From positions 62,001-126,000 of IMG/VR virus record IMGVR_UViG_3300009545_000018: a stretch of 64,000 nt of DNA, one strand, 5' to 3'. Positions 109-60,108 of this stretch are shown piece after piece; position 1 is the first letter of the stretch; every line of letters begins with the position of its first letter. Under the pieces are notes generated by a model, which did no database searches, had not been told where the DNA came from, and worked only from the letters and a program-made list of their open reading frames with translations. A program made the translations under genes and the position numbers.

Positions 109-516
109 ATGTCAACTAATATTTATATTATCATAGCGACTATTCTTTGGGGAGTGGGAGCCATTTTTACTAAGGTAGGCGCTAACAATTTACATCCTTT
201 AATGTTAGCATTAGTGGCAGAATTGTTCTATATAATATTTGTACCTTTAGGTATTTGGTTTACTAAAACTCCAATTCAAATGAACACTACGGGATTTATT
301 TTTGGATTTATTTCGGCGGCATGTGTTGGGGCAGGGTCCTTAGCTTATTACTTTGCTTTGCAGAAGGGTGCTGCGGGCACCATTGCAGCAGCAACAAGTG
401 TATACCCTGTGTTAACTTTAATTATTTCCGTTGCAATTTTAAACGAAGAAATAAGTTTAAGAAAAATAATTGGCTGCCTTCTTGCTATTATTTCTGTTAT
501 TATTATTTCAAAATGA
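109..516 (+). CDS. EamA/DMT family small membrane transporter
   Basis: 135 aa, 4-5 hydrophobic helices, YPVLTLIISVAILNEEIS EamA-like motif. Confidence 0.75.
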   Translation: MSTNIYIIIATILWGVGAIFTKVGANNLHPLMLALVAELFYIIFVPLGIWFTKTPIQMNTTGFIFGFISAACVGAGSLAYYFALQKGAAGTIAAATSVYPVLTLIISVAILNEEISLRKIIGCLLAIISVIIISK

Positions 517-830
517 AATGTCCTATTTGTCAGAAATTATTATTAACTAATATTAATGAAAAATGGTGTGAACAAACCGTTTTTACTAATGATAGTGCAA
601 ATTTACATTATGTAGTTTTTAATATTAAAAATAATAATATGGCTTTATTTTTTAAATATAAAGATCATTCATATGAATTTGACTATTTTTCTTCATCTCA
701 AAAAACAAATATAACATATTATATGGGCAAAACTACTCATGATAGTGATTTTTATTTAGGGGAAATGAAAAATCTAGAAGAACTCTATAAGGCAACACTT
801 AAGTATTTAAAAAACAAAGCATTCTTATGA
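513..830 (+). CDS. small CPxC protein with KAF C-terminal tag
   Basis: ATG at 513 (MKCPICQ) overlaps upstream stop; ends KNKAFL; longer track ORF start judged spurious. Confidence 0.7.
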   Translation: MKCPICQKLLLTNINEKWCEQTVFTNDSANLHYVVFNIKNNNMALFFKYKDHSYEFDYFSSSQKTNITYYMGKTTHDSDFYLGEMKNLEELYKATLKYLKNKAFL

Positions 831-1144
831 TAATGAAATGTCCCTTTTGTAAAGAAGAACTACAATTAGGTATAGAAATATATTTTTGTAATAATGATAA
901 ATTTATTTATCATGATGTAAGTTTTAATACAATAACAAAAGATATACATTTAGCATTTTTATCAGAAAATAAAGAAATAGAATATGAATTTGAATATCTT
1001 TCAGATAAAAAACTTGTAAGTCTATTTGTGTACTCTAACAATCCAGTTACAAGTTTTCTATCTTTAAATTTCGGGGAAATAAATTCTTTGGATGAATTTT
1101 ATACTAAAACAAAATCTTACGTCAAAAATATAGCATTTCAATGA
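827..1144 (+). CDS. small CPxC protein with KAF-like tag
   Basis: MKCPFC...KNIAFQ. Confidence 0.7.
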   Translation: MIMKCPFCKEELQLGIEIYFCNNDKFIYHDVSFNTITKDIHLAFLSENKEIEYEFEYLSDKKLVSLFVYSNNPVTSFLSLNFGEINSLDEFYTKTKSYVKNIAFQ

Positions 1145-1863
1145 TTGAACAATTAAAAACATTATACAACACTTCTCCTCTTGCTTCTAACTGGATTAAA
1201 GAAAATGAACCTGATCCAAATCTTATTTATAACAGTGGAGTTGGGCATCAAGTTAAGCAAGGAATAGCATTATCTAACTTAGTTAGGTTTGATTTAGATG
1301 AGCCTAGGGTGGCAGCCACTCATAGAAGTAAATCTTGCATACTTCCAGTCTTAATGTTTAAGGTTTGGCATTATGATAATGGAGGTGCCTTTTGCTTTAT
1401 AAGAGATAATTTTCATGATGTCAAGCTATCAGTAGTATCTGAGTTTCCTATTGATATTAATTATAATTATATACATCATGAAATGTCTCAAGAAGAATAT
1501 GATGCTGAAAAGAAACGCTGTATTGATTATGATAATAAAGGAACTCCCAGATTAACTGAAGATGAGAAATCTGGAGATGGTTGGATAAATGGTTGGTCCG
1601 GCAATAAAATTATCAGGAAAGATAATAAGATTTGGAAAGCCTATAACGTTAATGAAGTGTATTGTGAAGGCATTAATAGATTAAATTTGCCCAATGAAGT
1701 CTTTCGACCTTATGAAGAAGGTTATGATATGTTTACAATTGCGGCAGGATCTTTTGCACATGTTGCTTATTTATTTGAACATCTTCAAAACGAAATACAA
1801 CATAAGGTTTATTTAAAATTAAAACAAATTAGGGATCAAAATGATAATCTCAAAAGTATGTGA
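1141..1863 (+). CDS. hypothetical phage protein
   Basis: 240 aa ORF, translationally coupled. Confidence 0.6.
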   Translation: MIEQLKTLYNTSPLASNWIKENEPDPNLIYNSGVGHQVKQGIALSNLVRFDLDEPRVAATHRSKSCILPVLMFKVWHYDNGGAFCFIRDNFHDVKLSVVSEFPIDINYNYIHHEMSQEEYDAEKKRCIDYDNKGTPRLTEDEKSGDGWINGWSGNKIIRKDNKIWKAYNVNEVYCEGINRLNLPNEVFRPYEEGYDMFTIAAGSFAHVAYLFEHLQNEIQHKVYLKLKQIRDQNDNLKSM

Positions 1864-2326
1864 GAAAATTTCCAAAAGTTTGCCAGGTATAACTATTCGT
1901 TTGCCAAACCCTAAAACAAAAATTAAACAAGATTATTTAAGTCGTTTCTATTTTTTCTTAGCTGATCGAGATTTTGGAAACATATTCTTACATCACTTTC
2001 ATAGTTCAGATTTAGATGTAGGTGAAGGTGGATTTGGATTATTACATAATCATCCATTTTCCTGGTCATTATCATTTGTATTAGTCAATGGTTATTGGGA
2101 AGAAAGATTAAATCCAGACCAAACAGTTTCACGAAGATTTGTTAAACCATTTTCTTTTAACTTCCTATCTCGTAAAGATTTCCATCGGGTAGACTTAGTT
2201 GATGGTAAAAAAGCTTGGACTATATTTTTTACTGGTTCCCGTTCTAGTCGTGGCAGTTGGGGATTTTATGATAGGATAACTAAACAATATAAAGACTTTA
2301 CCACTTCACCTAATGCAATTAAATAA
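1841..2326 (+). CDS. cupin-fold protein
   Basis: LHHFHSSD..LHNHPFSW..FHRV motifs. Confidence 0.55.
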   Translation: MIISKVCEKISKSLPGITIRLPNPKTKIKQDYLSRFYFFLADRDFGNIFLHHFHSSDLDVGEGGFGLLHNHPFSWSLSFVLVNGYWEERLNPDQTVSRRFVKPFSFNFLSRKDFHRVDLVDGKKAWTIFFTGSRSSRGSWGFYDRITKQYKDFTTSPNAIK

Positions 2327-2337
2327 GGAAATATAAT

Positions 2338-2712
2338 ATGTCTACATCAAATTATAAAAGCAGATTATTAAATCCATTCTATCTAGGAATTTATAAGGAT
2401 AGTCGTGAAGATTATCTTACATATGTTGTTTATTTAAACGTCGCAACTGAAGAGGAACAAAAAGAGTTTAATGAAATATTTCGTGCTAAAGTATTAGCAG
2501 CATGGAATAAGCATATTAAGGATTGCGATAAACAAAGAGAAGAACATCAATCTCATATTGAACTTCAAAAGAAAGAAATTATTAAGTTAAGGCAACTTGG
2601 TCGTTTAGATATGGCGAATAAGCGTGAAGAGTTTGTTCTTCTTTTAGAAAAAAAAGAATTTCCAGGTTATACAACCTGGAGCTATAGATCGTTTGATTTA
2701 GGTTGGGATTAA
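2338..2712 (+). CDS. hypothetical protein
   Basis: ORF with AAGGA SD. Confidence 0.55.
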   Translation: MSTSNYKSRLLNPFYLGIYKDSREDYLTYVVYLNVATEEEQKEFNEIFRAKVLAAWNKHIKDCDKQREEHQSHIELQKKEIIKLRQLGRLDMANKREEFVLLLEKKEFPGYTTWSYRSFDLGWD

Positions 2713-2728: not shown

Positions 2729-3028
2729 ATGAACTGCCCCTTTTGTAAAAAATCTCTTATAAAAGAACCTGGCGGATATTTTTGTAAAAAAAACAAGACG
2801 CATGAATTTTCTATAGGTAACGATCCGTCTTCTGTAAATGATGAACCATATTGGCTTTTATATATTCATGAAGATAAAATTCAGATAGGGAAATATCCAA
2901 AGGGTAATTATATTACTTTTAGAAATAGAGATGGCTTTGGTGGAGAAATAATTAATATTGATCCATTTTCAATAAAAGATTCCCACTCAATTATTAATAA
3001 ATATAAAAAGTTAAAAGCCTTTTTATAA
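2729..3028 (+). CDS. small CPxC protein with KAF tag
   Basis: MNCPFC...KLKAFL. Confidence 0.7.
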   Translation: MNCPFCKKSLIKEPGGYFCKKNKTHEFSIGNDPSSVNDEPYWLLYIHEDKIQIGKYPKGNYITFRNRDGFGGEIINIDPFSIKDSHSIINKYKKLKAFL

Positions 3029-3040
3029 TCGTAATTATAT

Positions 3041-3343
3041 ATGACATTTAATATATGCCCACTTTGTCAATCTAAACTACCAGATAAGGGTGTAAGTTAT
3101 TATACTTGTTATGATAATAATCATGTTTATATTTATACTGGTGGTAATAAATGTTGGTATTTTAAAGATTGTAGAAAAAACATTAGAGTAGGTAAAGATC
3201 TATATAATTATTATATAGTTTTTGATAAAGTATCTTTTGGTAAAAATAATATGATAACATTACAACCTTTTAATGTTCAAGATTCTATGGAAATAATTGA
3301 TAAATTTTATGTTAGATATCAAAAGCTGAAAGCGTTCACTTAA
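3041..3343 (+). CDS. small CPxC protein with KAF tag
   Basis: ICPLC...KLKAFT. Confidence 0.7.
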   Translation: MTFNICPLCQSKLPDKGVSYYTCYDNNHVYIYTGGNKCWYFKDCRKNIRVGKDLYNYYIVFDKVSFGKNNMITLQPFNVQDSMEIIDKFYVRYQKLKAFT

Positions 3344-4286: not shown

Positions 4287-5456
4287 ATGTCTATTGCAGA
4301 TCTCTTAAATAAAAAGGTTCGTCTCTTCGTATTTGCCACAGGAGCGGGGGCAGGAGCCCAGAAAACATTATGGGACATTCCTGGATGTTCAAGTTTTCTT
4401 GTAGGAGCTGGATTTACATATGATACTAAACTTACCTCTAAGATAATTGGATATACTCCAAAGCAATTTGCTAGTTTAGATACAGCCGCTGAATTAGCTA
4501 TGGCAGCTTATATGGAAGCATATGATCCCACTCTTAAAGATCATGATACAATTGGTATTGGTCTTTCAGCTTCTGTAGCATCAACTGTTGCACATAAGGG
4601 TGATCATAGAATACATTTAGTTGCAATTAGTAATAAAAAAGTTTATACTATTTCCTTTATTGTTAATAAAGGAACTGGTGAGCCTCAGAGAAAAAATGAT
4701 GGTGAGATTGCTGATCGTCTTATTATAGAAACTATAAAGGGCATTACTAATGTAAATGGATTAAGTGGTTTGGATTCATTTAAATATATGTATAGTGGTT
4801 CTTGTTATGTTTCTAACATAGTAAGTGATGAAAATTCTAGTATAGTTAAAGATTTATTATTACAACGTCCCTTCTTTAAATCTGATGGAACTAAATGTTC
4901 AACCAAAGATTTTTTTGGAGAGGTGACAGAATACCCAAATTATATTTTTTATCCTGGTAGTTTTAATCCGCTGCATCATGGACATTTAAATGCGGCGAAA
5001 CAATCATATAAGACAGCAGTTCATTTAAATGATAATGTTGAAGGTGTAATATTTACTACTTGTATTAATCCAAAACATAAAGCAGAACCAACAGTTCCAG
5101 AGTTACTACAGCGTATTAAACAGATGCGAGGACATAATTTTCTACTTACAATGGATGACCCACTCTTTATTGATAAAGCAAAGATGTTTCCAGGGTCTAT
5201 GATTACTATTGGAACTGATGTATTATTATCTTTGTTTGACCCTAAGTGGGGAGTTGATGCAGTAGAAATGCTAGAAATATTTAGGGAAAACAATGTTCGG
5301 TTTCTAGTGCAGGGGCGTTTAGTTGATGATAAATTTGTTTCTTTGCGAAATGTTCGAGATCAAAATAAATTAATGCAAGATAATAAATACTATAAATTAT
5401 TTGCGCATGTAGAAGGTAGGGTTGATATTTCTTCTACTGAACTTAGAAATAAATGA
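4287..5456 (+). CDS. CinA-like / NMN adenylyltransferase-like fusion
   Basis: C-terminal PGSFNPLHHGH (HIGH) and ISSTELR; N-terminal CinA-like region. Confidence 0.7.
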   Translation: MSIADLLNKKVRLFVFATGAGAGAQKTLWDIPGCSSFLVGAGFTYDTKLTSKIIGYTPKQFASLDTAAELAMAAYMEAYDPTLKDHDTIGIGLSASVASTVAHKGDHRIHLVAISNKKVYTISFIVNKGTGEPQRKNDGEIADRLIIETIKGITNVNGLSGLDSFKYMYSGSCYVSNIVSDENSSIVKDLLLQRPFFKSDGTKCSTKDFFGEVTEYPNYIFYPGSFNPLHHGHLNAAKQSYKTAVHLNDNVEGVIFTTCINPKHKAEPTVPELLQRIKQMRGHNFLLTMDDPLFIDKAKMFPGSMITIGTDVLLSLFDPKWGVDAVEMLEIFRENNVRFLVQGRLVDDKFVSLRNVRDQNKLMQDNKYYKLFAHVEGRVDISSTELRNK

Positions 5457-5791
5457 CAGATAATCCAGAAATAGATGAGTATGGAATTAAGCGATGGTTT
5501 AATGAAAATGGTGAGTTACATCGTTTAGATGGTCCTGCAGTAATTGGACATGGATATGAAAGTTGGTATGTTAATGGAAAAAGACATCGAGATAATGGTC
5601 CGGCAGTAAGCATTGTTTATGAAGATGGAGTTCTTTGCCAAGAATGGTATATAAATAATCTTCTACATAGATTAGATGGTCCCGCAATTATTGATGAATA
5701 TGGTCCGGCTTGGTATGTAAATGACAATAAAATTGAATGCTCCTCTCAAGAAGAATTTAAAAAGTTACTTAAATTGAAAGCCTTTTGGTAA
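5453..5791 (+). CDS. HRLDGPA-repeat protein with KAF tag
   Basis: three HRxDGPA-like repeats; ends KLKAFW. Confidence 0.75.
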   Translation: MTDNPEIDEYGIKRWFNENGELHRLDGPAVIGHGYESWYVNGKRHRDNGPAVSIVYEDGVLCQEWYINNLLHRLDGPAIIDEYGPAWYVNDNKIECSSQEEFKKLLKLKAFW

Positions 5792-6030
5792 TGAAAGATT
5801 GGAATGAAAAAGCCGCCAAGAAATGGCTCTACCTTGCGGCTATGGATATAATTTCTGATGGATTATATGCTGAAGGTGGAGAATTAATTTATTATTATAA
5901 ATTTAATAAGAAAACAATATCTAGAGAATATTTTATCTTTATTATTAAAGATGTTCTTAGTTGGGACCATGATATGATAGAAGATGCAATAGAAGAAGTA
6001 AGAAAGTTAGCTTTATCAGCCTTTATTTAA
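5785..6030 (+). CDS. hypothetical protein, AF-type C-terminus
   Basis: ends ALSAFI. Confidence 0.55.
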   Translation: MVMKDWNEKAAKKWLYLAAMDIISDGLYAEGGELIYYYKFNKKTISREYFIFIIKDVLSWDHDMIEDAIEEVRKLALSAFI

Positions 6031-8216: not shown

Positions 8217-9715
8217 ATGTCTTTAGATAAAGTTTATCGTATAAAGTCTGTAAGAGAATACAATAGTTACGGTAGTAGTAAAAAATTTAAATTTAAAATA
8301 CAAAGAAGAGTAAAATTTTTATTTATATCCATTTGGGTAGATGAGTTATCAGACACTTATGATACAATTCAAACAGCAGAAAATTATCTCAAATCTTATT
8401 TAGAAGATAAACATTTTATTAAATACTTTTGTATTATAAGTAATTTTTCTGTTTTTGATGGCGAGACTTTAGTTGAATTAGAAAAGAAAACTAAATTAAA
8501 GGCATTTCTATAATGTACAGAATAGTCTGGGATCCTGAATATCATTATATTATACAAAAAAGATTTTTATATTTCTTTTGGTATACAATACGATATGATG
8601 GTGCATTATGTATTTCTTATTCGAAAAGAGAGCATGCAGAAGAAGTTTTAGAAAAATATATTGATAAAAAGAACTTGCAAAAATCTGGAATAAATCCAGA
8701 TATAAAATATTATTTAAATAGTAATAATAAATTGTTATCTGGAGATACTATTAATGAAGTAAATAAAAAGAGTAAGTTAAAGGCATTTTTATAATGTATA
8801 GAATTAGTTATCATCGAGTATATAAATTTATAATAGAAAGAAGATTTTTATATTTTTTCTGGATTATAATACGAGATCAAGAAGGGAATTTTGGCTGGAA
8901 TTACCCTACAAAAGAAGAGGCAGAAAAGGATCTACAAAAGTATTTAGATTTTAAAGCTACTAAAACAGATACTAATGTAAGTTATTATATGTTTCACAAT
9001 AGTAAGTTGCTCTCTGGCACTTCAGTTAAGGAAGTAAAGAAAAAACGTAAATTAATAGGATTTTTGTGATAGCAACCAGTTCTTCTAAAGAAGTTTGTAT
9101 TTATAAAGCTTTTGAGTGTAAATCATTATTAGAGTTTATGTTTTGTCTTAAGGAAGAATTAGTTCGTGGAATAACTTTTATATCATGCCTTAGAAATCAA
9201 GTCTCATGTGACTCAGAATTAGATGCCATATTAAGTAATGATCATTTTTACCATGTTACAGAAGATGGGGTGGCATATTCAATATTAGATTATAATTATT
9301 ATAACGGTTTTCTTTATAAAGAAATTCGACTATTAAATACTGATAAATTCTATCAATTTATTAAGGATAATGCTGATCGAATCGATAAGCTATATAAAAT
9401 GAAAGCTTTTATATGAACACCAAAAATATAGTTGAAGCAAAGTCTATGATAGAGTGGTTGTGTTTAATTGCACATGAATTTATTAATAATAAAGATTTAA
9501 CGATAGATACAGGGCTTATTGATTTGTTATATCCTAAATATTATTATATAGAATCAAATGATAAGATCATAGCAATACCAAAAAAGCTTCATAATTGGAA
9601 GAGCATTAAAGATTTTGGGTTAGATATTTCCGATGCGGAATATGATTTAATTGCATTTATTGCTCGTAATTGTGAAAAGCTAGATAAGATTTATAAATTG
9701 AAAGCCTTCATTTAA
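8217..9715 (+). CDS. array of five small KAF-tag proteins (8217-8513, 8513-8794, 8794-9069, 9066-9416, 9413-9715)
   Basis: overlapping start/stop codons; C-termini KLKAFL, KLKAFL, KLIGFL, KMKAFI, KLKAFI; first three share IQ/ERRFLYFFW-like motif. Confidence 0.75.
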
Positions 9716-16305: not shown

Positions 16306-17364
16306 ATGACTGAAATTTTATTAGCAAAACCAAAATTATCTTCTGATTTTATTGATTCTTCCGTTGGCGAGCCTTACATTATTCGCAAGCATCTCTTTGA
16401 TATGTTTACATGGGACGAGGATGTTGGAGCTGTTGATCTATCATATCCTTTTCCTCAAGGATATGAGCCGTTAGTTAAGATGTTGGAAGATAAACATCAA
16501 GCTCCAGTTATTATAACAAATGGCGCAAAACAAGCCTTGGGTGGGGCTTTTTACTCTCTACAAAAAATGGGTAAAATTAGAATGGGAATGAGAAAGCCAT
16601 ATTGGGCACTCATTCCTCCACTAGCAGAAATGCATGGAATTGTTCCGACTTTTCCAAAACAAGATGTGGATTGTCACCCAAATTTAACAATAGCTAAATT
16701 TAAGGATGACTTTAATCCAAAAGATTTAGATAGTTATTTATGTATAAATCCTAACAATCCTGATGGTTGGGTATCAAATGATATAGAAAATTTGTATTTA
16801 TTATTTGAGAGTCACAAGATTCCATTCATATTTGATGGCGCTTATTATCATGATATGTATATGCAAGGCACATATCCTAAACATAAGCAACTTGGTGACG
16901 TTCAAATTTATACTTTTTCTAAGTCTTTAGGTTTATCTGGACTTAGATTAGGGTACGCTGTTTGTCATAATACAGAGTTTTATAAACACATGTCTGCTTA
17001 TATGGAAGCTATGACAGTTGGAGTATCAACTATATCTCAAAGATATCTTTATAATTTACTTCAATCTATGAATCAGGATCCGGAACTAGTTCGTTCTTTT
17101 GAAGAAAGATGTTTTCTTTCTTTGTTAGAAAACAAAAAAGAATGTTTAAATATTAATCCGGAAGTTTTGGAATTGCCAAGTAATTTTACAGATATTCCAG
17201 GAATGTTTGGATGGTGTAAAGTAGGACCTAAAGCTGATTTTAATAAAGCTAAAATTCATTTTGTTGGTGGTAAGTTATTTGGTGCTGAGGATATGATACG
17301 AATAAATTTAGCTTTTGAAAATCATGTAATCAAAGATATTGTAAATAGATTGAATTCATTATGA
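16306..17364 (+). CDS. PLP-dependent class I/II aminotransferase
   Basis: NPNNPDG, DGAY, TFSKSLGLSGLRLGY. Confidence 0.85.
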   Translation: MTEILLAKPKLSSDFIDSSVGEPYIIRKHLFDMFTWDEDVGAVDLSYPFPQGYEPLVKMLEDKHQAPVIITNGAKQALGGAFYSLQKMGKIRMGMRKPYWALIPPLAEMHGIVPTFPKQDVDCHPNLTIAKFKDDFNPKDLDSYLCINPNNPDGWVSNDIENLYLLFESHKIPFIFDGAYYHDMYMQGTYPKHKQLGDVQIYTFSKSLGLSGLRLGYAVCHNTEFYKHMSAYMEAMTVGVSTISQRYLYNLLQSMNQDPELVRSFEERCFLSLLENKKECLNINPEVLELPSNFTDIPGMFGWCKVGPKADFNKAKIHFVGGKLFGAEDMIRINLAFENHVIKDIVNRLNSL

Positions 17365-24206: not shown

Positions 24207-24208
24207 TA

Positions 24209-42942: not shown

Positions 42943-43139
42943 TGACAAGTGAAAAATGGGTCGCCGGAGAAAATAGTATTTTTTGGTTTCTGCCAGGAAC
43001 CGATCTGTTACATCGTATAGATGGTCCAGCTATAGAATATTCTCATGGTGTTAATTATTGGTACTATAATGGCATTCAAATTGACTGTCAATCTCAAGAA
43101 GAGTTCAATCGTAAAATTAAACTCTTAGCATTTTTATAG
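42942..43139 (+). CDS. HRIDGPA-repeat protein with KAF-like tag
   Basis: LHRIDGPA; ends KLLAFL. Confidence 0.7.
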   Translation: MTSEKWVAGENSIFWFLPGTDLLHRIDGPAIEYSHGVNYWYYNGIQIDCQSQEEFNRKIKLLAFL

Positions 43140-44167: not shown

Positions 44168-45170
44168 ATGGATCAAAAAGATTTAATAATACAAGAATTA
44201 CATAATATCATTTATAAATATGGCGTCAAAGCTTTAATGGAATTTGAGTCTAGGTTTCCGTGTGATCAATTAAGTTGTGTTAAAGTTCCATATAATCATA
44301 TTCCTAACAATTCAAAATTCATAGAGAGAAATTTTGGATATGGAATTTTTGTTTGGCAAGGAATTTCTTATAATGATGCATATTTATTTAGAATTCAATC
44401 ATATGAGAAATTTTGGATCGATTGGAATCAATTTAAACGTTATCTAGAATTATTAGCATTTACATGAAGACTAAAAAAGATATTGCAGATTTACTTCGAC
44501 CTATGCTTGAAAAATATGGAAGAGAATATCTTGTTAATTTTAACTTATTGATTAATAACGTTACTTGGGACGGCACTCTTAGTGAGTATGTTTCTATTCC
44601 TTTTAATAACATAAGTGAACACAGAGTTAATTGTAGTTCTTTTTTAGAGCTTAAACAACATATTAATAATTTAGAGATGAAAAGAACTTGGGGAAATTCG
44701 TGGACATATATTGAAGTTCCATCTGATTGTAATGATTTTTTTCATCTTAGAATTGATGGTGTTGAAAATTTTTACATTAAGTGGGAAAAATATCAAAGAT
44801 ACTTAAATTTGAAAGCTTTTATATAATGACAACAGAAGAAGATTTTAGAAAAAGTTTATCTTGTATTATTGAAAAATTTGGTCCAGAACATTTTAGTGTT
44901 ATTTTAACAATTGCACAAAATTCAAGCTTTTATTTTAAAAGTAAAAATATGTTATTAATACCATTTAAATCTAATTCTTCGTTTAAAAGAGTAAATGTTA
45001 AATATGAGGAGTGTGCCGCTGTTGTATGGAAAAATTATGCTAATCATAAATATTTTCCATTTCCTCCAGATTGTGATGATTGGTATTGTATGCTTGGTGA
45101 TTCTTTTGAAAGTATACTAACTCTGTATAATGTTGGTAGCAAAATGATAAAAATGAAAGCTTTTATATAA
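44168..45170 (+). CDS. array of three KAF-tag proteins (44168-44467, 44464-44826, 44826-45170)
   Basis: ends ELLAFT, NLKAFI, KMKAFI; mutually similar N-termini. Confidence 0.7.
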
Positions 45171-50557: not shown

Positions 50558-51330
50558 ATGATTTCAAAATTAACAATCAAATCTTATGGAGTGACAGTAA
50601 CTCTTCCCAGTGAAATTCTAATTTTAGAAGATTGTATCTGGGCTAAAACTGGTGAACATTTAGCTTTAGGAAAAGACAAAAATATTATGGGTAATGATTG
50701 TTTTATTGTCCTTAGAAAAAACGGAGTTGTTATTTCTGGACCTTCTCCTTTAATTCATTCGGTTGGAGCAAATAGTTTAATTTATCAAGAGTGTTCGGTA
50801 GAAAAATATTATAAAATGAAAGCATTTTTGTAATGATCAAATATGTTGATGATAACGGTAAAGAAAAAATTTTACCTGAAAAAATAGTTATACTAAAATG
50901 TCCTGATAGTTGGCTTATTGAGCCTGGAGATTATATAGAATTTATTCATACATATTATCTTCATATGAGGATCTCCAGCTTTGAAATCAAAGTTTTAAAA
51001 GGATATCATAAGAATAAAATATTTGATTTACTCTTTAGTCATTTATCTAAGATTGAATATGTAAGCATAGAAAAGTTTGAAAAACTAAAGGCGTTTGTTT
51101 AAATGGAAACCAAGTGGATTTTAGTAACACAACAAAACTCTGTTTACTATAATAAAATCTTAGAATTAAAAGAAGGTTGGACATCAACCATTTATAATGG
51201 GACTATTGTTTGGTTTATTGAGTCAGTAAATGGTCAAGTTAGACATTATCCGGATTGGTTTGAGTTAAACGATTTGCCAACACATACAGTAGTAACAAAG
51301 GATGCCCTTAATTTATTAGCCTTTTTATAA
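50558..51330 (+). CDS. array of three KAF-tag proteins (50558-50833, 50833-51102, 51103-51330)
   Basis: ends KMKAFL, KLKAFV, NLLAFL. Confidence 0.7.
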
Positions 51331-51579: not shown

Positions 51580-51591
51580 TTAACTTTTCAT

Positions 51592-51720
51592 TTAAATGAA
51601 TGCCGATTCGGGAATACATTAAACACAAAGATACTGCAGCATGTGCCAGGCTAATCCACATGTACCTTAGGAGTACTCAGGGTAAAGTGTACCGACTTCT
51701 CAATCACCTTTGTCATTTAA
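51592..51720 (+). ncRNA. scaffold-family ncRNA copy H
   Basis: TTAAATGA/TCATTTAA, ATGCC, GATTCGGGAA/TTCTCAATC (imperfect), TACATT, TTTG. Confidence 0.62.
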
Positions 51721-51721
51721 C

Positions 51722-52962
51722 ATGAATTACTTAAAACACACATTAGATAACGGCACAGTATTAGAAATACCAGAAGAATTTATGGTATTAGATAATTTAC
51801 CATCAGAAGATCTACATTACAAAGTAGAATTAATTCTTGATTTTATTAGAGGCTGGGTATTTAAAATAACCCATATAAATGGTTTAGAACTAACTCAATA
51901 TAAAGAAGATCCAACATGGATTTGTTATTTTAGTCCAGAAAAGATTTTTAATAAAAAAATTATACCATGTTCACTTGAAAAATTTAACAATATGAAAGCA
52001 TTTTTATAATGTCAAAAGAAGAAAAACCATTATCACCTTATGAGATAAGAAGATTAGGTCATTGCAAAGAAACAGAGCAGTGTGTTGATGATCTATATTG
52101 TAATTGTCCTTGTTTACCTTGTTCTAAGCAAGATTGTTTTAGACCAGGATGTAAATGTGGTAGAACTCATCCATATAAAAATTAATGTACTTACATATCC
52201 ATGATAAAGATGTTCCATCTTCTATTTTAGTTTTAGAAGACTCAAAAACTCACACCATTGAAAAGAATTCTCATTTTGTTTTTAGAAAAATTAAGTATAA
52301 TGAATATTGTGTTGATTTTTTTAATGGTAAAGATAATCGTTATTCTTATGCAAGATATTCAGAAGATGATTTATATCGTATGTTTTTTGATGGCAAATTA
52401 AAATATAAAGAATTTTCTTTAGCCCAGTTTAATAAAATAAAAGCATTTTTATGAAATATTATATTATTGAGGATACAGTAGTTCCAAGTGAGTTCATTAT
52501 AATTCATGATACAGATTTATGTAGAATTTATAATATTTATCCAGAGTTTAATAGAAATATTTATACTCATAAGAATTTTTTTGATTATATAAGCTACGAT
52601 CTTGATTATAATTTTATTTCGATTGCTACCATGCCAGGCAGTCAATTACTAAGTTATATTGATAATAATAAGTTATTTCCAATAGAAAAGTTTAATAGTT
52701 TAAAGGCTTTCTTATGAAATATATTCAAACTGCTAAATATAATTATCCAGAAGAAATATTTGTAACACAAAGTTTCTTTAGACACGAGTGGACTAATAAA
52801 CACTTGGTATTAAAACAATATAATGAATATGTATTAAGTGTATTTTTAATAAATGGGGAAGAGCCCTCACATCCAATGGCTATTACCAATAATTTCATTC
52901 ATGAGGCTAATTTTTTAGAAATGTCTTTAGAAAGATATTTAAAGATTAAATCTTTCTTATAA
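51722..52962 (+). CDS. four KAF-tag proteins (51722-52009, 52185-52454, 52451-52717, 52714-52962) and a Cys-rich 58-aa ORF (52009-52185)
   Basis: ends NMKAFL, KIKAFL, SLKAFL, KIKSFL; overlapping start/stops. Confidence 0.7.
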
Positions 52963-55032: not shown

Positions 55033-55827
55033 ATGGTTACTATGAATACTAGTTATTTTCAAGTTTGTAAATGTCATTGTCATATTTCTAAGAATGTCAA
55101 GCACATTATGGCTTGTTGTTTTAATTGTAGCATTTGTGATAAGAATATTGTAAATGTTTATTTTACTTCGCACAAAAAAGCATGTGAAGAAGAAAAGAAG
55201 CAATTATTAGAAAAAATAACAAAAGAATTTAATGAAAGCACAAATAAGGATCATGGCGACAACAATTCATGAATTAAAAAATTGGTTCTTAAAGGGTAAG
55301 ACAAAGGGAGCTACACATATGATTATTGTTTGCTCTACTTTTGATTGGGAAGATTTTCCAATTTATGTTATGCCAAGCCAAGATGTCAAAAAAGAATTTG
55401 ATTTACAATCTAAAAAAGAGATGCAAAAGATAATGGAAGTTTATAATCTTAATAAAGATATTAGTGCTCAATTAAACCAATTTCGAACAATGGAGTTTTA
55501 ATGGACAATTTAATGTCAGACTTAAGACAGTCAGTAGCTTTATTTAAACACTCTTTATCTTCTTTTATTTTAAAGAAAGAGGTCTTTTCCATTGTTGATG
55601 GGTTGTCGTATCAACAATATTGTTTACAAGAAGCAATCTTTTATTTAGTTGAAATGGAAAGAGCCGCAAAAACCTTATTGCATTTATCATTGAATGATCA
55701 AAAACAAATTATGTTTTGGGCAATTCAAATGAGAGATGAAATGCAAAGAATCTTAAAAAATGATTTTCATACCATTTATGAGATGTTTTTGACCGATAAT
55801 GAGACGAGAGTAATTAATGCGTATTAA
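55033..55827 (+). CDS. three hypothetical proteins (55033-55272 Cys-rich, 55253-55501, 55501-55827)
   Basis: downstream of TTGACA-N16-TACTAT at 55016-55043; coupled ORFs. Confidence 0.5.
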
Positions 55828-56289
55828 GATAGAAAAAGCAAATAATAAAGCTAAATGTCGTGGACTTAAATGTAAAAAATTACCAGAATTTATCAATCGT
55901 AAAGGTAGAATAAGAAAAGACACTAGTTGCGCTGTTGTTAGTATAGCTAGTGCAGGTGGTGGAGCTACCGCCTTTTATTGTAGAGATTGTATTGATCAAA
56001 TTTATATGGATATGAAAATGGCTTTGGATCCAAAATTATGGATATTTAAATGAGAAATATTTTATATATTAAAGTGGAGCCTAATCCTGGTGGTAATGCT
56101 CCATGTTATTATAAAAATTGTAGTAATAATCCAGATTTAATAAATAAAGATGGTTCTATTAAAACAGGAACTTTAAGAGCTAGAATAGAAAATTCTTTCT
56201 ACTGTAAAGAATGTATTCCGAAAGTTTATAAGGATTTATGCTTTCAAATAAAGAGAGAATTAGATCCTAAGTTGTGGGCATTTAAATAA
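55817..56289 (+). CDS. two paralogous Zn-finger proteins (55817-56053, 56050-56289)
   Basis: FYCxxCI and C-termini LDPKLWIFK / LDPKLWAFK. Confidence 0.65.
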
Positions 56290-56484: not shown

Positions 56485-56907
56485 ATGATTGATTCATTAA
56501 AAGATTTAGAATTAGATAAAATTGATTTAAAAGCCGAAGATTATTTAGAAAAAATTAATTCTATTCTTCAAGAAAAACTTGGAGTAGGATTTAAAGAGAT
56601 CAAATCTCCTTTAATAGACTATGTTAAGTCTCATGCCGAAGAGTTATCATTATCATTTCCTAATATTGCGCCCCATGGTGACTATAGTAAAATGATTGAG
56701 GATAATGATGGTATGTCAAATTTTCTAAAGTCTTTAGAGAATTTAGATGATTGGAAAGTCTTATCAATAGATGAAGATACTAAATTTAATTTATTAAAGT
56801 TTTCTTTCGTATCTATAGCAGTAGATGATGGTGATTCCTTGGAAGGATTTACTTATCTATCTAAAGATGGTAAAATTAAACATTCTTTTGCTCAATATGT
56901 CGGATGA
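56485..56907 (+). CDS. acidic hypothetical protein
   Basis: AGGAG SD. Confidence 0.55.
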   Translation: MIDSLKDLELDKIDLKAEDYLEKINSILQEKLGVGFKEIKSPLIDYVKSHAEELSLSFPNIAPHGDYSKMIEDNDGMSNFLKSLENLDDWKVLSIDEDTKFNLLKFSFVSIAVDDGDSLEGFTYLSKDGKIKHSFAQYVG

Positions 56908-57209
56908 AAGACCTTACTGACGAAGAGATTGCAGAAGGTTGCGTCATGACAAGTGATGGGACAAAAAGATGGTATAATAAGGAAAACATATTGCATCGTT
57001 TAGATGGTCCTGCCATATTGTGTACCAATGGCAGTTATGCTTGGTATAAAGATGGTAAAAGACATCGTTTAGATGGTCCGGCTTATTATCTAAAAATCGC
57101 TTATAAATCATTAGAAATTATAAAAGAGTGGTATTTTGAAGGTAAAAAAATAGAATGTAGTTCTCAGGAAGAATTTGAAAAACTAATCAAACTAAAAGCA
57201 TTTTGGTAA
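56904..57209 (+). CDS. HRLDGPA-repeat protein with KAF tag
   Basis: two HRLDGPA repeats; ends KLKAFW. Confidence 0.75.
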   Translation: MKDLTDEEIAEGCVMTSDGTKRWYNKENILHRLDGPAILCTNGSYAWYKDGKRHRLDGPAYYLKIAYKSLEIIKEWYFEGKKIECSSQEEFEKLIKLKAFW

Positions 57210-58223: not shown

Positions 58224-58297
58224 GGGGCTGTGATATAATGCGATTATGTTGCCCTTGCAAGGCAAAAAAATGGGTTGGATTCCCATCAGCTCCACCA
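58224..58297 (+). tRNA. tRNA-Ala(TGC)
   Basis: G3:T70 pair, CT-TGC-AA, ACCA; T-loop TTGGATT. Confidence 0.9.
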
Positions 58298-58326
58298 ATT
58301 TATTATAATAATTAATCCGTCATTTC

Positions 58327-58761
58327 ATGATATATGAATTGGTCATGAGACCATTATTAACAATAAACGCTTACGGTTCTGTAATTGACAATAGCAGAAA
58401 AAATTATGCTGGAAATTATACTGGAGCTATGGGACCTATAGGACCTACGGGTCCAACAGGTCCAACAGGTCCTATAGGGGGCGCTTTTATCTCAGCTTCT
58501 ATACCAGCTATTGCTACAAATTCAACATCCGGTGCCTCTCTTGTTTGGAATGGTTCTGGAGCTGGATGGATCTCCTCATATATTTCTGGAGCTACTGCCG
58601 CTTCAGGATACGGAAAGTCTCTAACTCACGTGAATCCTTCAACTTCTGTCTCAGTTGGACCCAAATATATTTCTATATTAGGTGGTTCTTTTTATAAAGA
58701 CCAACCAGATGATTATCCAAAATACCGAAATATAATAAGCGGAAGCTTTATCAATAAATAA
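58327..58761 (+). CDS. Ser/Gly-rich protein with short collagen-like (GPT)n repeat
   Basis: GPIGPTGPTGPTGPIG. Confidence 0.55.
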   Translation: MIYELVMRPLLTINAYGSVIDNSRKNYAGNYTGAMGPIGPTGPTGPTGPIGGAFISASIPAIATNSTSGASLVWNGSGAGWISSYISGATAASGYGKSLTHVNPSTSVSVGPKYISILGGSFYKDQPDDYPKYRNIISGSFINK

Positions 58762-58835
58762 TCTTTCTACCATAACTAATGGTAATAAAAGAGAATAACA
58801 TCATGCAACTTAATTAATCTTTTAAGGGAATAAGT

Positions 58836-59711
58836 GTGATGTCTAATAAAGCTATAGAATCAGAAGATCTTCCAGAATTAGAGTTGATTGAAATGGACAA
58901 GCATTCTGAAGAAAAAATAAAGAGAATAAACAAAGACATTTTGGGATTACAGACCGAAAGTGACTTAGTACTTTTTAAACATATTCCAGAAATAGTAAAT
59001 AAATTAGATTATTTATCAAATAATTTTAATATTCTTAGAGACGATCATACTGATACTAATAGATTAGTACGTAAGATGTATTATGATCAAATACCATCTT
59101 TACATTCTAAAATAGATAGTCTGAATGATAAGTTAGATCTTCTTTGTAGTAAAATAGATAAGTTAATAAACAAATGATAGTATATTTAATTATCTTGATA
59201 TTGGCAATAGCTACTTCGATTTGTGCAGCAATGTATTGGACTGTTAAAATTGAGTTAAAACATTTACAAGATAATTTTCAGATTAAACTATTAGCCAAAC
59301 ATATTAGTTTAACAAGAGAAATAGAATCCCTTACTAAGATTAGGGCTAAGGAATTAGATTTTACTGAACTAGATAAAATCATAGAAAATTTAAGAAGGCT
59401 CCACAATGGATAATGATCTATTAGAGCGCGCGCTCGACAAACAAGAACTTTTTGAAAAGTCTCTTTTAGAATTAAGAGATATTTCTTATGCTCTAAAACT
59501 AAGTGTAAACACTCAAGAATTAGAGAATAGATATTTAAAGCAATCTGTAGAAGAGCTTAAAAAGATTCTTGAAAAAGAAGCAGAAAAAAGAGAACAAGAA
59601 AAACAGGCAGCTAAATCATCAGCTACCACAGTTAAAACTGCATTAATTACTGGCATATTAGGTTTTATTACTGCTACAGTAGTTGCAATTATTTCTTTGT
59701 TCAAACATTAA
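58836..59711 (+). CDS. three coiled-coil/TM proteins (58836-59177, 59174-59413, 59406-59711)
   Basis: heptad patterns; N- or C-terminal TM helices. Confidence 0.55.
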
Positions 59712-59727
59712 TAACTATTAAGTTGTC

Positions 59728-60108
59728 ATGCCAACACAAAAAGAAATATTAAATTCTTTGCGTTGCCCAATTTGTCAATCACAAATTGATGGAGTATCTT
59801 ATTCAATAAGATTTTATTGTGCCCAAGATCAAAAACATTATAATGTTTGGATTAAAGATGGTAAATTAAAAAAAGAAACTATTAATCTTTATGATTTAAA
59901 AAAATTATTAAAGTATGAATTAACGCAGACTTATGAGACTAATGGTGTTAAAACGATAATTATATTAGAAAATATTGATGCAGAGGGTAGGGAAATTTTC
60001 TCATTTGAGGAAAATTCTTATACAGCTAATCTTGCTTTATTTGATTTTAGAAATTTTAATTATGATAAAGCTATAAATAAAATAAAAACATTTTTAGTAT
60101 TTGGATAA
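59728..60108 (+). CDS. CPxC protein with extended KAF-like end
   Basis: CPIC...KIKTFLVFG. Confidence 0.6.
   Translation: MPTQKEILNSLRCPICQSQIDGVSYSIRFYCAQDQKHYNVWIKDGKLKKETINLYDLKKLLKYELTQTYETNGVKTIIILENIDAEGREIFSFEENSYTANLALFDFRNFNYDKAINKIKTFLVFG

What the first reader, a model, noticed from the sequence alone, without database searches (positions are those of the whole stretch)
513..60108. About 33 diverse small proteins share a C-terminal K-hydrophobic-K-A-F-hydrophobic tag
Seen: ORFs of about 65-140 aa end in KLKAFL, KLKAFI, KLKAFW, KLKAFT, KMKAFI, NLKAFV, KIKAFL, KLLAFL, KLKSFT and similar. They sit in arrays at 513-1144, 2729-3343, 8217-9715, 33978-34932, 39738-41720, 44168-45170 and 50558-52962, and as singletons. 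The bodies belong to several unrelated families (CPxC, HRLDGPA, others). Ala codons vary (GCA/GCC/GCG/GCT), Phe codons vary (TTT/TTC) and all three stops occur, so selection appears to act on the peptide rather than on a DNA repeat. No recognisable enzyme in the window carries the tag. Inference: a sorting or docking signal (capsid loading/ejection, binding to a hub or PDZ-like domain, compartment import) or a degron marking a large effector library.
Basis: partly seen in the sequence, partly recalled or inferred. Interest (0 to 1): 0.9.

Follow-up and report, generated by a model that had tools for sequence, protein, structure and literature searches.

The report
Shared C-terminal tag on phage proteins
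About a third of the genes in this stretch of a 448-kb uncultured "huge phage" encode small, mutually unrelated proteins that all end in the same nine-residue peptide (…K-F/Y-x-K-L-K-A-F-x-stop). This looks like a previously undescribed address or docking tag whose reader is still unknown.

Summary
In the window, 23 plus-strand ORFs (65–130 aa) end in a strong [KR]-[FY]-x-[KN]-[LMI]-[KR]-[AS]-F-x-COOH motif and about 13 more in weak or variant forms. That is roughly 30% of all genes. None lies on the minus strand, none in 16,512 internal 9-mers and none in 3,896 control phage ORFs. Phe is always the penultimate residue (78 of 78 unbiased occurrences). Wobble bases vary freely, so selection acts on the peptide. 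The bodies fall into many families and at least three fold classes (Zn-ribbon/β-sheet, MORN-like, all-α).

The window is part of a 447,763-bp IMG/VR contig. The same tag fills arrays in at least 10 other large uncultured phage contigs from various metagenomes. It was absent from cellular genomes, from the one other huge-phage genome sampled and from the papers searched. The tail seems ancestral to a widespread MORN-type phage protein family and spread to unrelated bodies in this clade.

Best reading: a modular docking or sorting tag, forming the end of a C-terminal helix, read together with the free carboxyl end by one common partner. The partner was not identified. Candidates include capsid loading, compartment import and an AAA+ protease. 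Rivals are weaker: a structural helix, a membrane anchor, a termination-level effect and a DNA signal.

The parts
513..830 (+). Tagged small protein, Zn-ribbon family (CPxC). Tail ...KYLKNKAFL.
   Evidence: gene call starts at 513; the ORF is open from 321. PSSM 18.0 bits.
827..1144 (+). Zn-ribbon family paralogue with a degenerate tail ...SYVKNIAFQ.
   Evidence: related to the 513-830 protein, E = 3e-10. PSSM -5.1 bits.
2729..3028 (+). Tagged Zn-ribbon protein. Tail ...KYKKLKAFL.
   Evidence: PSSM 24.3 bits. AlphaFold pLDDT 88, pTM 0.77: Zn-ribbon, 7 strands and helix 82-96 ending in the tag. The L004 orthologue keeps the tail.
3041..3343 (+). Tagged Zn-ribbon protein. Tail ...RYQKLKAFT.
   Evidence: PSSM 22.4 bits..
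5453..5791 (+). Tagged MORN-like (HRLDGPA repeat) protein. Tail ...SSQEEFKKLLKLKAFW.
   Evidence: PSSM 16.4 bits..
5785..6030 (+). Weak tag ...VRKLALSAFI.
   Evidence: PSSM 5.4 bits. The L004 orthologue ends ...KKLTAFI.
8217..8513 (+). Tagged orphan protein. Tail ...KKTKLKAFL.
   Evidence: PSSM 20.4 bits. Orthologue: body 49% identical, tail 9/9.
8513..8794 (+). Tagged orphan protein. Tail ...KKSKLKAFL.
   Evidence: PSSM 19.9 bits.
8794..9069 (+). Variant tail ...KKRKLIGFL (Gly at -3).
   Evidence: PSSM 4.0 bits..
9066..9416 (+). Tagged orphan protein. Tail ...KLYKMKAFI.
   Evidence: PSSM 19.2 bits. Orthologue: body 45% identical, tail 7/9.
9413..9715 (+). Tagged orphan protein. Tail ...KIYKLKAFI.
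   Evidence: PSSM 22.2 bits. No homologue outside its own contig.
17361..17699 (+). Degenerate tail ...RVLQLKALW (Leu in place of Phe).
   Evidence: Conserved 8/9 in the L004 orthologue.
24176..24478 (+). Weak tag ...KRIKLIAFI.
   Evidence: PSSM 9.6 bits. The gene call starts at 24209.
27640..28065 (+). Variant tail ...RRWSKLQVFS (Val at -3).
   Evidence: The same K-L-x-V-F-S/T type is seen outside the window.
33978..34226 (+). Tagged protein that looks alpha-helical by eye (not predicted). Tail ...KIGNLKAFI.
   Evidence: PSSM 16.2 bits. Family with 34232-34462.
34232..34462 (+). Weak tag ...KYKSMQAFS.
   Evidence: PSSM 7.2 bits.
34459..34695 (+). Variant tail ...RYQKFYVFS.
   Evidence: PSSM -3.5 bits.
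34696..34932 (+). Tagged protein. Tail ...RLLKLKSFT.
   Evidence: PSSM 16.6 bits.
39738..40061 (+). Tagged orphan protein. Tail ...KINKLKAFI.
   Evidence: PSSM 20.9 bits.
40848..41117 (+). Tagged protein. Tail ...VKTNLKAFV.
   Evidence: The gene call is 40863-41117.
41433..41720 (+). Tagged protein that looks alpha-helical by eye (not predicted). Tail ...KINKLKAFI.
   Evidence: PSSM 20.9 bits.
42942..43139 (+). Tagged MORN-like protein, 65 aa. Tail ...QSQEEFNRKIKLLAFL.
   Evidence: PSSM 12.9 bits..
44168..44467 (+). Weak tag ...RYLELLAFT.
   Evidence: PSSM 7.8 bits. Family with the next two genes.
44464..44826 (+). Tagged protein. Tail ...RYLNLKAFI.
44826..45170 (+). Tagged protein. Tail ...KMIKMKAFI.
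   Evidence: PSSM 20.1 bits. Gene call.
50558..50833 (+). Tagged protein, first of a seven-gene array. Tail ...KYYKMKAFL.
   Evidence: PSSM 22.4 bits.
50833..51102 (+). Tagged protein. Tail ...KFEKLKAFV.
   Evidence: PSSM 24.9 bits.
51103..51330 (+). Weak tag ...DALNLLAFL.
   Evidence: PSSM 2.2 bits.
51710..52009 (+). Tagged protein. Tail ...KFNNMKAFL.
   Evidence: PSSM 21.0 bits.
52185..52454 (+). Tagged protein. Tail ...QFNKIKAFL.
   Evidence: PSSM 13.8 bits.
52451..52717 (+). Tagged protein. Tail ...KFNSLKAFL.
   Evidence: PSSM 19.7 bits.
52714..52962 (+). Tagged protein. Tail ...RYLKIKSFL.
   Evidence: PSSM 17.4 bits.
55817..56053 (+). Variant tail ...DPKLWIFK.
   Evidence: Compare the DPKLKAF tails in L005.
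56050..56289 (+). Variant tail ...DPKLWAFK.
   Evidence: PSSM 4.5 bits.
56904..57209 (+). Tagged MORN-like protein. Tail ...SSQEEFEKLIKLKAFW.
   Evidence: PSSM 15.4 bits. AlphaFold: beta-hairpins plus helix 88-100, the best-predicted part. More than 2,000 homologues; about half of the top 120 carry this tail.
59728..60108 (+). Type-2-like tail ...NKIKTFLVFG.
   Evidence: Matches the [KR]-I-K-x-Phi-Phi-x-F-x tails of relatives.

Best explanation
The tag is a modular short linear motif: +(-9) Phi(-8) x [K/N](-6) [L/M/I](-5) [K/R](-4) [A/S/V](-3) F(-2) x(-1)-COOH. It forms the last turns of a C-terminal alpha-helix on many unrelated small soluble proteins.

Shown here:
- It is kept by selection on the peptide.
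- Phe is always the penultimate residue.
- It sits on bodies of different predicted secondary-structure class.
- It outlasts rapid divergence of those bodies.
- It is confined to a clade of uncultured huge phages, plus a wider MORN-type phage protein family from which it probably spread.

Inferred mechanism: one common partner reads the helix end together with the free carboxyl terminus. The tag therefore works as an address or docking handle. It plugs a large, fast-evolving library of accessory proteins, probably host-directed ones, into a single machine or place.

My preferred sub-reading is sorting or delivery, either loading into the prohead for co-injection or routing to a phage-made compartment or hub. 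The reason is that only a benefit useful to almost any accessory protein explains why the tag spread across unrelated families. Docking to, or degradation by, an AAA+ protease is the next most likely. The partner itself is not identified.
For: - Enrichment and controls.
- Absolute position lock, 78 of 78.
- Free wobble positions and Ser from two codon families.
- Unrelated bodies. Two contrasting predictions: Zn-ribbon plus beta-sheet at pLDDT 88 and MORN-like beta-hairpins. Bodies at 33978 and 41433 look all-alpha by eye only.
- Positions -9, -8 and -6 are conserved although they were never used for selection.
- Orthologue pairs have bodies 28-49% identical but tails 4-9 of 9 identical. Untagged proteins' tails are mostly 0-3 of 9.
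- The same tag fills arrays in at least 10 other large contigs.
- The tag is modular. MORN homologues carry either this tail or other recurrent C-terminal modules. In a 140-kb phage contig only the MORN paralogues have it.
- Tagged proteins have no transmembrane segment or signal peptide and no family annotation, as is typical of phage accessory genes.
[quoted passage not shown] Giant phage heads can hold about 50 proteins and more than 40 MDa of ejection proteins (PMC7411985 abstract).
Against: - No receptor was found. About 104 kb of this genome (the window and its two flanks), plus a further ~20-kb locus (L238) from the same or a near-identical genome, show no PDZ, TPR, clamp, ClpX/Lon or capsid gene.
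- AlphaFold gives a compact, confident single-domain model for the Zn-ribbon family (pTM 0.77). The conserved hydrophobic stripe (-11, -8, -5, -2) may therefore pack against the protein's own body rather than a partner. Coordinates could not be inspected.
- Tagged genes are co-oriented and often translationally coupled with tRNA genes and with NAD, methylase and nucleotide-metabolism genes. No virion genes are nearby, which does not favour late expression and packaging.
- There are no experimental data, and no cultured relative exists.
Confidence: 0.55

Rival explanations
1. C-terminal degron or adaptor-docking peptide for an AAA+ protease (host ClpXP, ClpAP, FtsH or Lon, or a phage enzyme). 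Either the tagged proteins are short-lived early proteins or decoy substrates, or they are adaptors that hand bound host targets to the protease.
For: - The strict lock to the free C-terminus is what carboxylate-reading degron receptors require (own knowledge: ssrA and MuA-type ClpX signals, and the SspB C-terminal ClpX-binding tail).
- The last five residues are largely non-polar and preceded by Lys/Arg, most clearly in type-2 tails such as ...LIIFS.
- The diverse, fast-evolving bodies would suit target-binding adaptors.
Against: - The last residue, which matters most for ClpX signals, is the least conserved position of the tag (L, I, T, W, V, S, A, Q).
- The invariant A-F has no counterpart in known degrons.
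- No protease or unfoldase gene was seen in the regions read.
- It is hard to see why instability would benefit about 30% of genes.
- No tmRNA was found for comparison.
Confidence: 0.18
2. The tail is a purely structural element: a C-terminal helix that caps the hydrophobic face of each small domain, or drives oligomerisation. Its sequence was inherited from a common ancestor or copied by recombination, and there is no separate reader.
For: - AlphaFold predicts the tail as the end of a 13-15-residue helix with the highest confidence in the chain, in compact models.
- Hydrophobic positions recur every third residue at -11, -8, -5 and -2.
- In one lineage the tail is confined to a single family, the MORN type.
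Against: - Structure alone does not require identical residues (K, K, A, F) on bodies of different fold class, nor a chain that always ends exactly one residue after Phe.
- Ordinary C-terminal helices in the untagged proteins of the same genome are poorly conserved.
- MORN homologues do without the tail, using other end modules.
Confidence: 0.12
3. Membrane-targeting amphipathic helix, as in MinD or FtsA, that parks the small proteins on the inner membrane.
For: - A basic-plus-aromatic C-terminal helix.
- MORN repeats are often membrane-associated (own knowledge).
- The window also encodes LemA, SPFH, TPM and M50 membrane proteins.
Against: - The hydrophobic moment of the last 12 residues is modest (0.26) and no higher than in untagged proteins (0.31). 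Lys(-9) sits inside the hydrophobic arc.
- Membrane-targeting helices tolerate sequence and length variation, whereas this tag has an invariant A-F and a fixed end.
Confidence: 0.07
4. The motif acts as a nascent peptide inside the ribosome at termination, for example tuning release or re-initiation in tightly packed arrays, possibly together with the phage's RF2-like release factor.
For: - The motif is locked to the stop codon.
- Its length of about 9-10 residues matches the upper exit tunnel (own knowledge).
- An RF2-like gene is embedded in tagged arrays in contigs from at least three tag-bearing lineages.
- Many tagged genes overlap the next start as ATGA or TAATG.
Against: - Stop/start overlap is no more common for tagged genes (16 of 30) than for untagged genes (32 of 80; p = 0.28).
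- Enzymes in the same coupled operons lack the tag.
- Conservation follows helical periodicity back to -12, with helix N-caps, and the helix is part of a predicted fold.
- RF2 genes are common in huge phages without the tag.
Confidence: 0.05
5. A DNA- or RNA-level signal (recombination site, promoter, terminator or processing site) that happens to be translated.
For: The motif sits at gene boundaries within arrays.
Against: - Wobble positions carry 0.2-0.6 bits.
- All six Leu codons and all four Ala codons are used. Ser comes from both TCN and AGT, and all three stops occur.
- There are no matches on the opposite strand or out of frame in the phage.
Confidence: 0.01

Closest known systems
Capsid targeting sequence (CTS) of T-even phage internal proteins (IPI, IPII, IPIII, Alt and the polymorphic internal-protein loci)
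   Same: A roughly 10-residue terminal peptide is the only thing shared by otherwise unrelated, fast-evolving small proteins encoded in variable arrays. In T4 it directs them into the prohead core for injection as anti-defence proteins (PMC3012670).
   Different: - The CTS is N-terminal and is cut off by the prohead protease. This tag is C-terminal, locked to the chain end, and shows no conserved cleavage site.
- T-even phages have a handful of CTS proteins. This genome has at least 36 in 64 kb.
- Virion location is untested here.
- There is no sequence similarity.
Encapsulin cargo-loading peptides and microcompartment encapsulation peptides
   Same: Short C-terminal (or N-terminal) peptides or helices on diverse cargo dock to the inside of a protein shell. 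For encapsulins the shell has the HK97 phage-capsid fold (own knowledge).
   Different: - The consensus differs; encapsulin peptides are Gly/Ser/Leu-rich.
- Those peptides are not strictly locked to the last residue.
- The cargo gene normally sits next to the shell gene, and no shell gene is near these arrays.
C-terminal degrons and adaptor tails read by ClpX (ssrA-type, MuA-type, SspB ClpX-binding tail)
   Same: Extreme C-terminal, dependent on the free carboxylate, a few non-polar residues preceded by basic ones, and transferable to any protein (own knowledge).
   Different: Different residues matter. Here Phe(-2) and Ala(-3) are invariant and the last residue is variable. There is no evidence of instability.
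PTS1 peroxisomal import signal (…SKL-COOH read by the Pex5 TPR domain)
   Same: A position-locked C-terminal peptide with upstream basic context routes many unrelated folded proteins into one compartment (own knowledge).
   Different: PTS1 is eukaryotic, a tripeptide, and has a different sequence. No compartment or TPR receptor is known for this phage.
bS21 C-terminal RLY/KLY motif, including S21 homologues of huge phages
   Same: A basic alpha-helical C-terminal tail whose last three residues (basic-Leu-aromatic) dock on a cellular machine, here 16S rRNA h37 and A1167 (PMC7550191).
   Different: It belongs to one protein family, the aromatic residue is the very last one, and it is not shared across unrelated proteins.
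MORN-repeat small proteins of uncultured phages (weak DUF6745 matches), e.g. WP_348063077.1 'hypothetical protein [Flavobacterium sp.]'
   Same: Direct homologues of window proteins 5453-5791, 42942-43139 and 56904-57209, many with the same SQEEFE[KR]L[IL]KLKAFW tail.
   Different: They are uncharacterised. In those genomes the tail is restricted to the MORN family, whereas in the window's clade it is also found on many unrelated bodies.

Membership tests
T4-type capsid targeting sequence | Short conserved terminal peptide shared by otherwise unrelated small proteins in variable arrays | tested here: met
   (tagged genes cluster: 14 adjacent pairs against 7.8 expected).
T4-type capsid targeting sequence | The peptide is at the N-terminus and is removed by the prohead protease | tested here: not met
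   The tag is at the extreme C-terminus. N-termini are not conserved across families. No conserved cleavage motif lies next to the tag.
T4-type capsid targeting sequence | Tagged proteins are present in the virion and injected | not testable with these tools
   The phage is uncultured, there are no proteomics data, and no structural genes lie in the regions read.
ClpX-type C-terminal degron | Signal at the extreme C-terminus with a free carboxylate | tested here: met
   78 of 78 occurrences end one residue after Phe.
ClpX-type C-terminal degron | The last two or three residues are the main determinants (small non-polar, e.g. Ala-Ala) | tested here: not met
   Position -1 is the least conserved tag position (about 2.0 bits: L, I, T, V, S, A, W). 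The invariant residues are at -2 and -3.
ClpX-type C-terminal degron | Confers protease-dependent instability | not testable with these tools
   Needs half-life assays.
Encapsulin cargo-loading peptide | The cargo gene is adjacent to an HK97-fold shell gene, and the peptide has a Gly/Ser/Leu-rich consensus | tested here: not met
   There is no capsid or encapsulin Pfam hit in about 104 kb. The consensus is Lys/Leu/Ala/Phe.
PDZ-binding C-terminal motif | The last residue (P0) and P-2 are the specificity positions, and a PDZ protein is present | tested here: inconclusive
   P0 is mostly hydrophobic but variable. P-2 is A, S or V, and the strongest position is P-1 (Phe), which PDZ domains usually ignore. 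No PDZ domain appears among the Pfam hits in the regions read.
Bacterial beta-clamp-binding motif (Q-L-[S/D]-L-F) | Pentapeptide with Gln1, Leu2, Leu4 and Phe5, often C-terminal | tested here: inconclusive
   Leu2 and Phe5 equivalents are present. Position 1 is K or N rather than Q, and position 4 is an invariant small residue rather than Leu. The consensus is recalled from memory, and no clamp gene was seen in the regions read.
MinD/FtsA-type membrane-targeting helix | Strongly amphipathic C-terminal helix that tolerates sequence variation | tested here: not met
   A helix is predicted. However, the hydrophobic moment is 0.26 against 0.31 for untagged tails, and the sequence and the chain end are rigid.
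Single paralogous protein family | Detectable similarity throughout the proteins | tested here: not met
   With tails removed there are 4 small BLAST families and 17 singletons. The two predicted bodies differ in secondary structure. There are no shared Pfam or PHROG families.
DNA-level repeat or recombination site | Nucleotide conservation that includes synonymous sites | tested here: not met
MORN-type phage small-protein family (weak DUF6745 matches) | HRxDGPA-type repeats with significant sequence similarity | tested here: met
   Met only for 5453-5791, 42942-43139 and 56904-57209. One search found 2,058 homologues at E <= 0.001. The other tagged proteins are not members.

The most novel reading that the evidence does not exclude
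A proteome-scale C-terminal addressing system in a clade of huge phages. A PTS1-like or CTS-like 'postcode' read at the free carboxyl end routes a hundred or more different small accessory proteins either into the capsid for co-injection with the DNA or into a phage-built compartment or hub. Under this reading, any newly acquired gene becomes 'deliverable' simply by gaining nine codons.
Probability: 0.3. Interest if true: 0.9.

Novelty: new variant of a known kind. Interest (0 to 1): 0.72.

Why it matters
If the tag is an address label, it marks out a whole class of phage accessory proteins, likely host-takeover or anti-defence factors, in genomes where about 90% of genes are unannotated. It also points to a single receptor whose identification would explain how huge phages organise or deliver them.

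A nine-residue transferable tag would be a practical tool for loading or localising foreign proteins in such phages. The T4 CTS has been used in this way (PMC3012670).

The finding also gives a clean, testable example of a short linear motif spreading across unrelated gene families within a virus lineage. The motif itself is a simple marker for recognising members of this uncultured clade in metagenomes.

Tried and rejected
1. Megablast and tblastn against 50,697 GenBank phages found no close or cultured relative. MORN hits in PA5oct and Atu_ph07 lack the tail.
2. Pfam, PHROGs and PADLOC on tagged proteins gave nothing.
It was reused as a background control.
5. The cellular-genome scan gave 24 matches. 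Of these, 23 were out of frame and one was a spurious ORF in 60%-GC DNA.
6. A tail-only HMM against 1.84 billion proteins returned 0 hits at E <= 0.001. The motif is too short for that database size, with about 24-28 bits at best.
7. Foldseek of the confident Zn-ribbon model against PDB and BFVD gave nothing significant, only weak polo-box-like and uncharacterised phage hits. The PDB sequence search was also empty.
8. The sigma-70 promoter scan was not distinguishable from shuffles in this AT-rich DNA (135 against 114 +/- 10). Expression timing is therefore unresolved, although a few intergenic TTGACA-N17-TATAAT sites exist.
9. The search for a receptor among recurring neighbours found RF2, an M50 peptidase, NUDIX and RNase HII. 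RF2 is common in tagless huge phages. An M50 homologue occurs in LR745206, which showed no tag in the 50 kb read. With tags on about 30% of genes, adjacency carries little weight.
10. No tmRNA was found in the fetched loci for comparison with a degron.
11. The literature has no paper with the motif in a relevant sense and no description in the jumbo-phage comparative overview.
12. The idea that the neighbouring glutathionylspermidine-synthase-like ATP-grasp enzyme (6611-7753) modifies the free carboxyl end of tagged proteins rests only on adjacency and could not be tested.

Full report
**What the window is.** The 64-kb window is 31% G+C. Nearly all genes are on the plus strand and tightly packed, and there are 16 tRNA genes. 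It is bases 62,001-126,000 of a 447,763-bp viral contig, IMGVR_UViG_3300009545_000018 = Ga0105237_10000004. Annotated genes are auxiliary or metabolic. They include:
- two NMN-adenylyltransferase-like proteins, NUDIX, PARG and NADAR;
- a class-II aminoacyl-tRNA synthetase and SpoU;
- two DNA methylases, a 5'-3' exonuclease and a nucleoside deoxyribosyltransferase;
- Ro60/vWA and a glutathionylspermidine-synthase-like ATP-grasp enzyme;
- an M50 peptidase, LemA/SPFH/TPM membrane proteins and homing endonucleases.

There are no virion genes. No close or cultured relative exists among 50,697 GenBank phage records.

**Checking the observation.**
- ORFs ending in K-L-K-A-F-x and close variants sit at the coordinates given.
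- A loose end-pattern is found on 27 of 160 plus-strand open frames and 0 of 143 minus-strand frames.
- To avoid circularity I trained a nine-position matrix on tails from other contigs only. With it, 21 of 115 window gene ends score 10 bits or more. By comparison, 0 of 16,512 internal 9-mers and 0 of 3,896 ORF ends in 1.08 Mb of unrelated phage DNA reach that score.
- Two further strong cases were lost to my crude gene caller (44464-44826 and 40848-41117). Seven are weak and about six are degenerate or belong to a second type. The total is about 36 of roughly 115 genes. All are 170 aa or shorter, and none has a recognised enzyme domain.
- The motif is longer than reported. Positions -9 (K/R), -8 (F/Y) and -6 (K/N) are conserved although they were never used to pick the sequences.

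**Peptide or DNA?** Over 100 non-redundant tags from several genomes (23-43% G+C):
- Leu(-5) uses all six Leu codons, plus Met and Ile.
- Ala(-3) uses all four codons, with Ser substitutes from both TCN and AGT.
- Phe is TTT 73 / TTC 27.
- Stops are TGA 54, TAA 44 and TAG 2.
- Wobble positions carry 0.2-0.6 bits.

Selection is on the peptide.

**Position lock.** In 157,000 residues of open frame (six frames; window plus relatives), every one of the 78 non-redundant K[LIM][KR]AF occurrences lies exactly one residue before a stop. This is the most telling property. Whatever reads the motif is sensitive to the chain end, or to the stop codon.

**Bodies.**
- With tails removed, BLAST gives four small families and 17 singletons. 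The families are Zn-ribbon, MORN-like HRLDGPA, a three-member family at 44168-45170, and a two-member family at 33978-34462.
- AlphaFold on the Zn-ribbon family gives a confident model (pLDDT 88, pTM 0.77). It has a Zn-ribbon, a seven-strand sheet and helix 82-96, with A-F-L at the very end. There is no significant structural neighbour.
- The MORN-type protein is predicted as beta-hairpins plus helix 88-100, which is the best-predicted part.
- The proteins at 33978 and 41433 look all-alpha-helical by eye from their sequences; no structure prediction was run on them.
- The same tail therefore ends proteins of at least two predicted, contrasting architectures.
- Tagged proteins have no transmembrane segment or signal peptide, and their bodies are mildly acidic.

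**Relatives.**
- A strict degenerate DNA pattern found the tag in eight IMG/VR contigs besides the window's own, including ones of 394 and 446 kb.
- It also found the tag in many metagenome contigs. One is a 419-kb contig carrying dozens of roughly 85-aa MORN-like paralogues that end in RKFVKLKAFL.
- In 596 Gb of cellular genomes there were only chance matches.
- A 256-kb contig (ZJ_forest) and a locus that carries window-genome tagged proteins (L238) hold uninterrupted arrays of 20-30 mostly Zn-ribbon genes. These carry two related tail types: type 1 (K-[LM]-K-A-F-Phi) and type 2 ([KR]-[IL]-K-x-Phi-Phi-x-F-S).
- Tags continue on both sides of the window.
- A 635-kb huge phage (LR745206) that shares the M50 and Ro60 genes showed no tag in the 50 kb examined.
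- Between the window and a 61%-identical relative, tagged orthologues have bodies 28-49% identical but tails 4-9 of 9 identical. The C-termini of untagged proteins are usually less conserved than their bodies.

**Origin.**
- The MORN-type window protein has more than 2,000 homologues. About half of the top 120 end in SQEEFE[KR]L[IL]KLKAFW (45 by a strict pattern, about 15 more by eye).
- The remaining homologues carry other recurrent C-terminal modules.
- One member is RefSeq WP_348063077.1, a hypothetical protein binned to Flavobacterium.
- In a 140-kb, 43%-GC phage contig the tail is on nine MORN paralogues and on nothing else.
- The tail is thus probably an old end-module of that family, and its core has been copied onto many unrelated bodies in the huge-phage clade.

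**Mechanism.** The following are shown: peptide-level selection, an absolute C-terminal lock, modularity, clade restriction and helical context. It is inferred that one partner reads the helix end together with the free carboxyl group, so the tag acts as a docking or address handle.

I prefer a sorting or delivery role, meaning prohead loading or routing to a phage-made site. Only a benefit useful to nearly any accessory protein explains the spread across families. The T-even capsid targeting sequence shows exactly this evolutionary pattern (PMC3012670), and giant phage heads carry dozens of ejection proteins (PMC7411985).

Points against this reading:
- The tagged genes are interleaved and often coupled with tRNA and metabolic genes, not virion genes.
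- No receptor was found.
- The AlphaFold model is a compact single domain, so the hydrophobic stripe may be used intramolecularly.

**Rivals.**
- *Protease degron or adaptor tail.* This fits the carboxylate lock and the non-polar, basic-flanked ending. However, the last residue is the least conserved position, and a general benefit is unclear.
- *Purely structural helix.* This does not explain identical residues on different folds, or the fixed chain end.
- *Membrane-targeting helix.* This is disfavoured by the modest hydrophobic moment (0.26 against 0.31 for untagged tails) and by the rigidity of the motif.
- *Ribosome or termination-level role.* This is suggested by the stop-codon lock and by an RF2-like gene embedded in the arrays of several genomes. 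Against it, stop/start overlap is no commoner for tagged genes (p = 0.28), coupled enzymes lack the tag, and RF2 is common in tagless huge phages.
- *DNA-level signal.* This is excluded by codon diversity.

**Comparison and novelty.** The nearest concepts are the T4 CTS, encapsulin and microcompartment loading peptides, ClpX-type C-terminal signals, PTS1, and the bS21 RLY tail (PMC7550191). The tag fails defining features of each one tested:
- it is on the wrong terminus for a CTS;
- it has the wrong determinant positions for ClpX or PDZ signals;
- it has the wrong consensus and genomic context for encapsulins;
- it has weak amphipathicity for a membrane helix.

No paper in the searched library mentions the motif in a relevant sense. 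I rate it a new variant of a known kind (a terminal address or docking peptide) with an unknown reader. It is unusual in its scale (about 30% of genes), its absolute end lock and its clade specificity.

Noticed in passing
L234:3433-4524; L238:4598-5677; L009:1147-2226; L171:3421-4479: An RF2-like class-I release factor gene is embedded in, and translationally coupled with, arrays of tagged genes in contigs representing at least three tag-bearing lineages. Most genes in those arrays end in TGA overlapping the next ATG (ATGA). A bL12-like gene lies nearby in L238.
   Followed up: partly
L234 and L238 arrays; window 59728-60108: A second, related tail type, [KR]-[IL]-K-x-Phi-Phi-x-F-S (e.g. ...KIKTLLTFS), sits on the same Zn-ribbon bodies and on 180-230-aa proteins. 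Intermediates of the form K-L-x-V-F-[S/T/A] occur in and around the window.
   Followed up: partly
P0012-P0128 (homologues of window 56904-57209): The MORN-type family carries several alternative recurrent C-terminal modules besides the KLKAFW helix (e.g. endings ...DGKKYKLV.., ...KFGVD..KIKIVK, ...NPGIEMDI). This suggests end-module swapping.
   Followed up: no
window 6611-7753: A glutathionylspermidine-synthase-like ATP-grasp enzyme (PHROG E = 4e-131) sits between two tag arrays and is 72% conserved in the relative L004. Enzymes of this type act on a terminal carboxylate, so a link to the free C-terminus of tagged proteins is conceivable but untested.
   Followed up: no
window 3355-4089: A small M50 (site-2-type) membrane metallopeptidase lies next to tagged Zn-ribbon genes. 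It recurs in the distant 419-kb tag-bearing contig but is rare in GenBank phages (2 records).
   Followed up: partly
window 4287-5456, 19468-19917, 40061-40897, 45170-45664, 62530-63039: A cluster of NAD and ADP-ribose-related genes: two NMNAT-like proteins, NUDIX, PARG and NADAR. It resembles a counter-defence or NAD-salvage set.
   Followed up: no
window 37824-39404: A Ro60/TROVE plus vWA protein is 50% identical to one in Myxococcus phage Mx1. A VWA protein lies at 41754-42470.
   Followed up: no
window 14679-16298 and the 16 tRNA genes: A class-II (Asp/Lys/Asn-type) aminoacyl-tRNA synthetase and a large tRNA set. ARAGORN reports one tRNA with a four-base anticodon (46213-46302). More tRNAs lie in both flanks.
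   Followed up: no
window 19938-23188: A LemA - SPFH/Band 7 - TPM membrane-protein cluster. Several proteins here end in Gly/Ser-rich ...GGSGASSD[W/F] tails.
   Followed up: no
window 30890-33031 (minus strand): A two-gene minus-strand island (250 and 461 aa, no family hits) lies between two DNA methylase genes. A LAGLIDADG endonuclease lies on the minus strand at 61027-61932. HNH (14206-14679) and DUF559 (46654-47622) endonucleases are also present.
   Followed up: no
window 48480-49148 and 49540-50557: Gaps of 0.7-1.0 kb without convincing ORFs lie among tRNA genes just upstream of the largest tag array. There are no Rfam matches other than tRNAs.
   Followed up: partly
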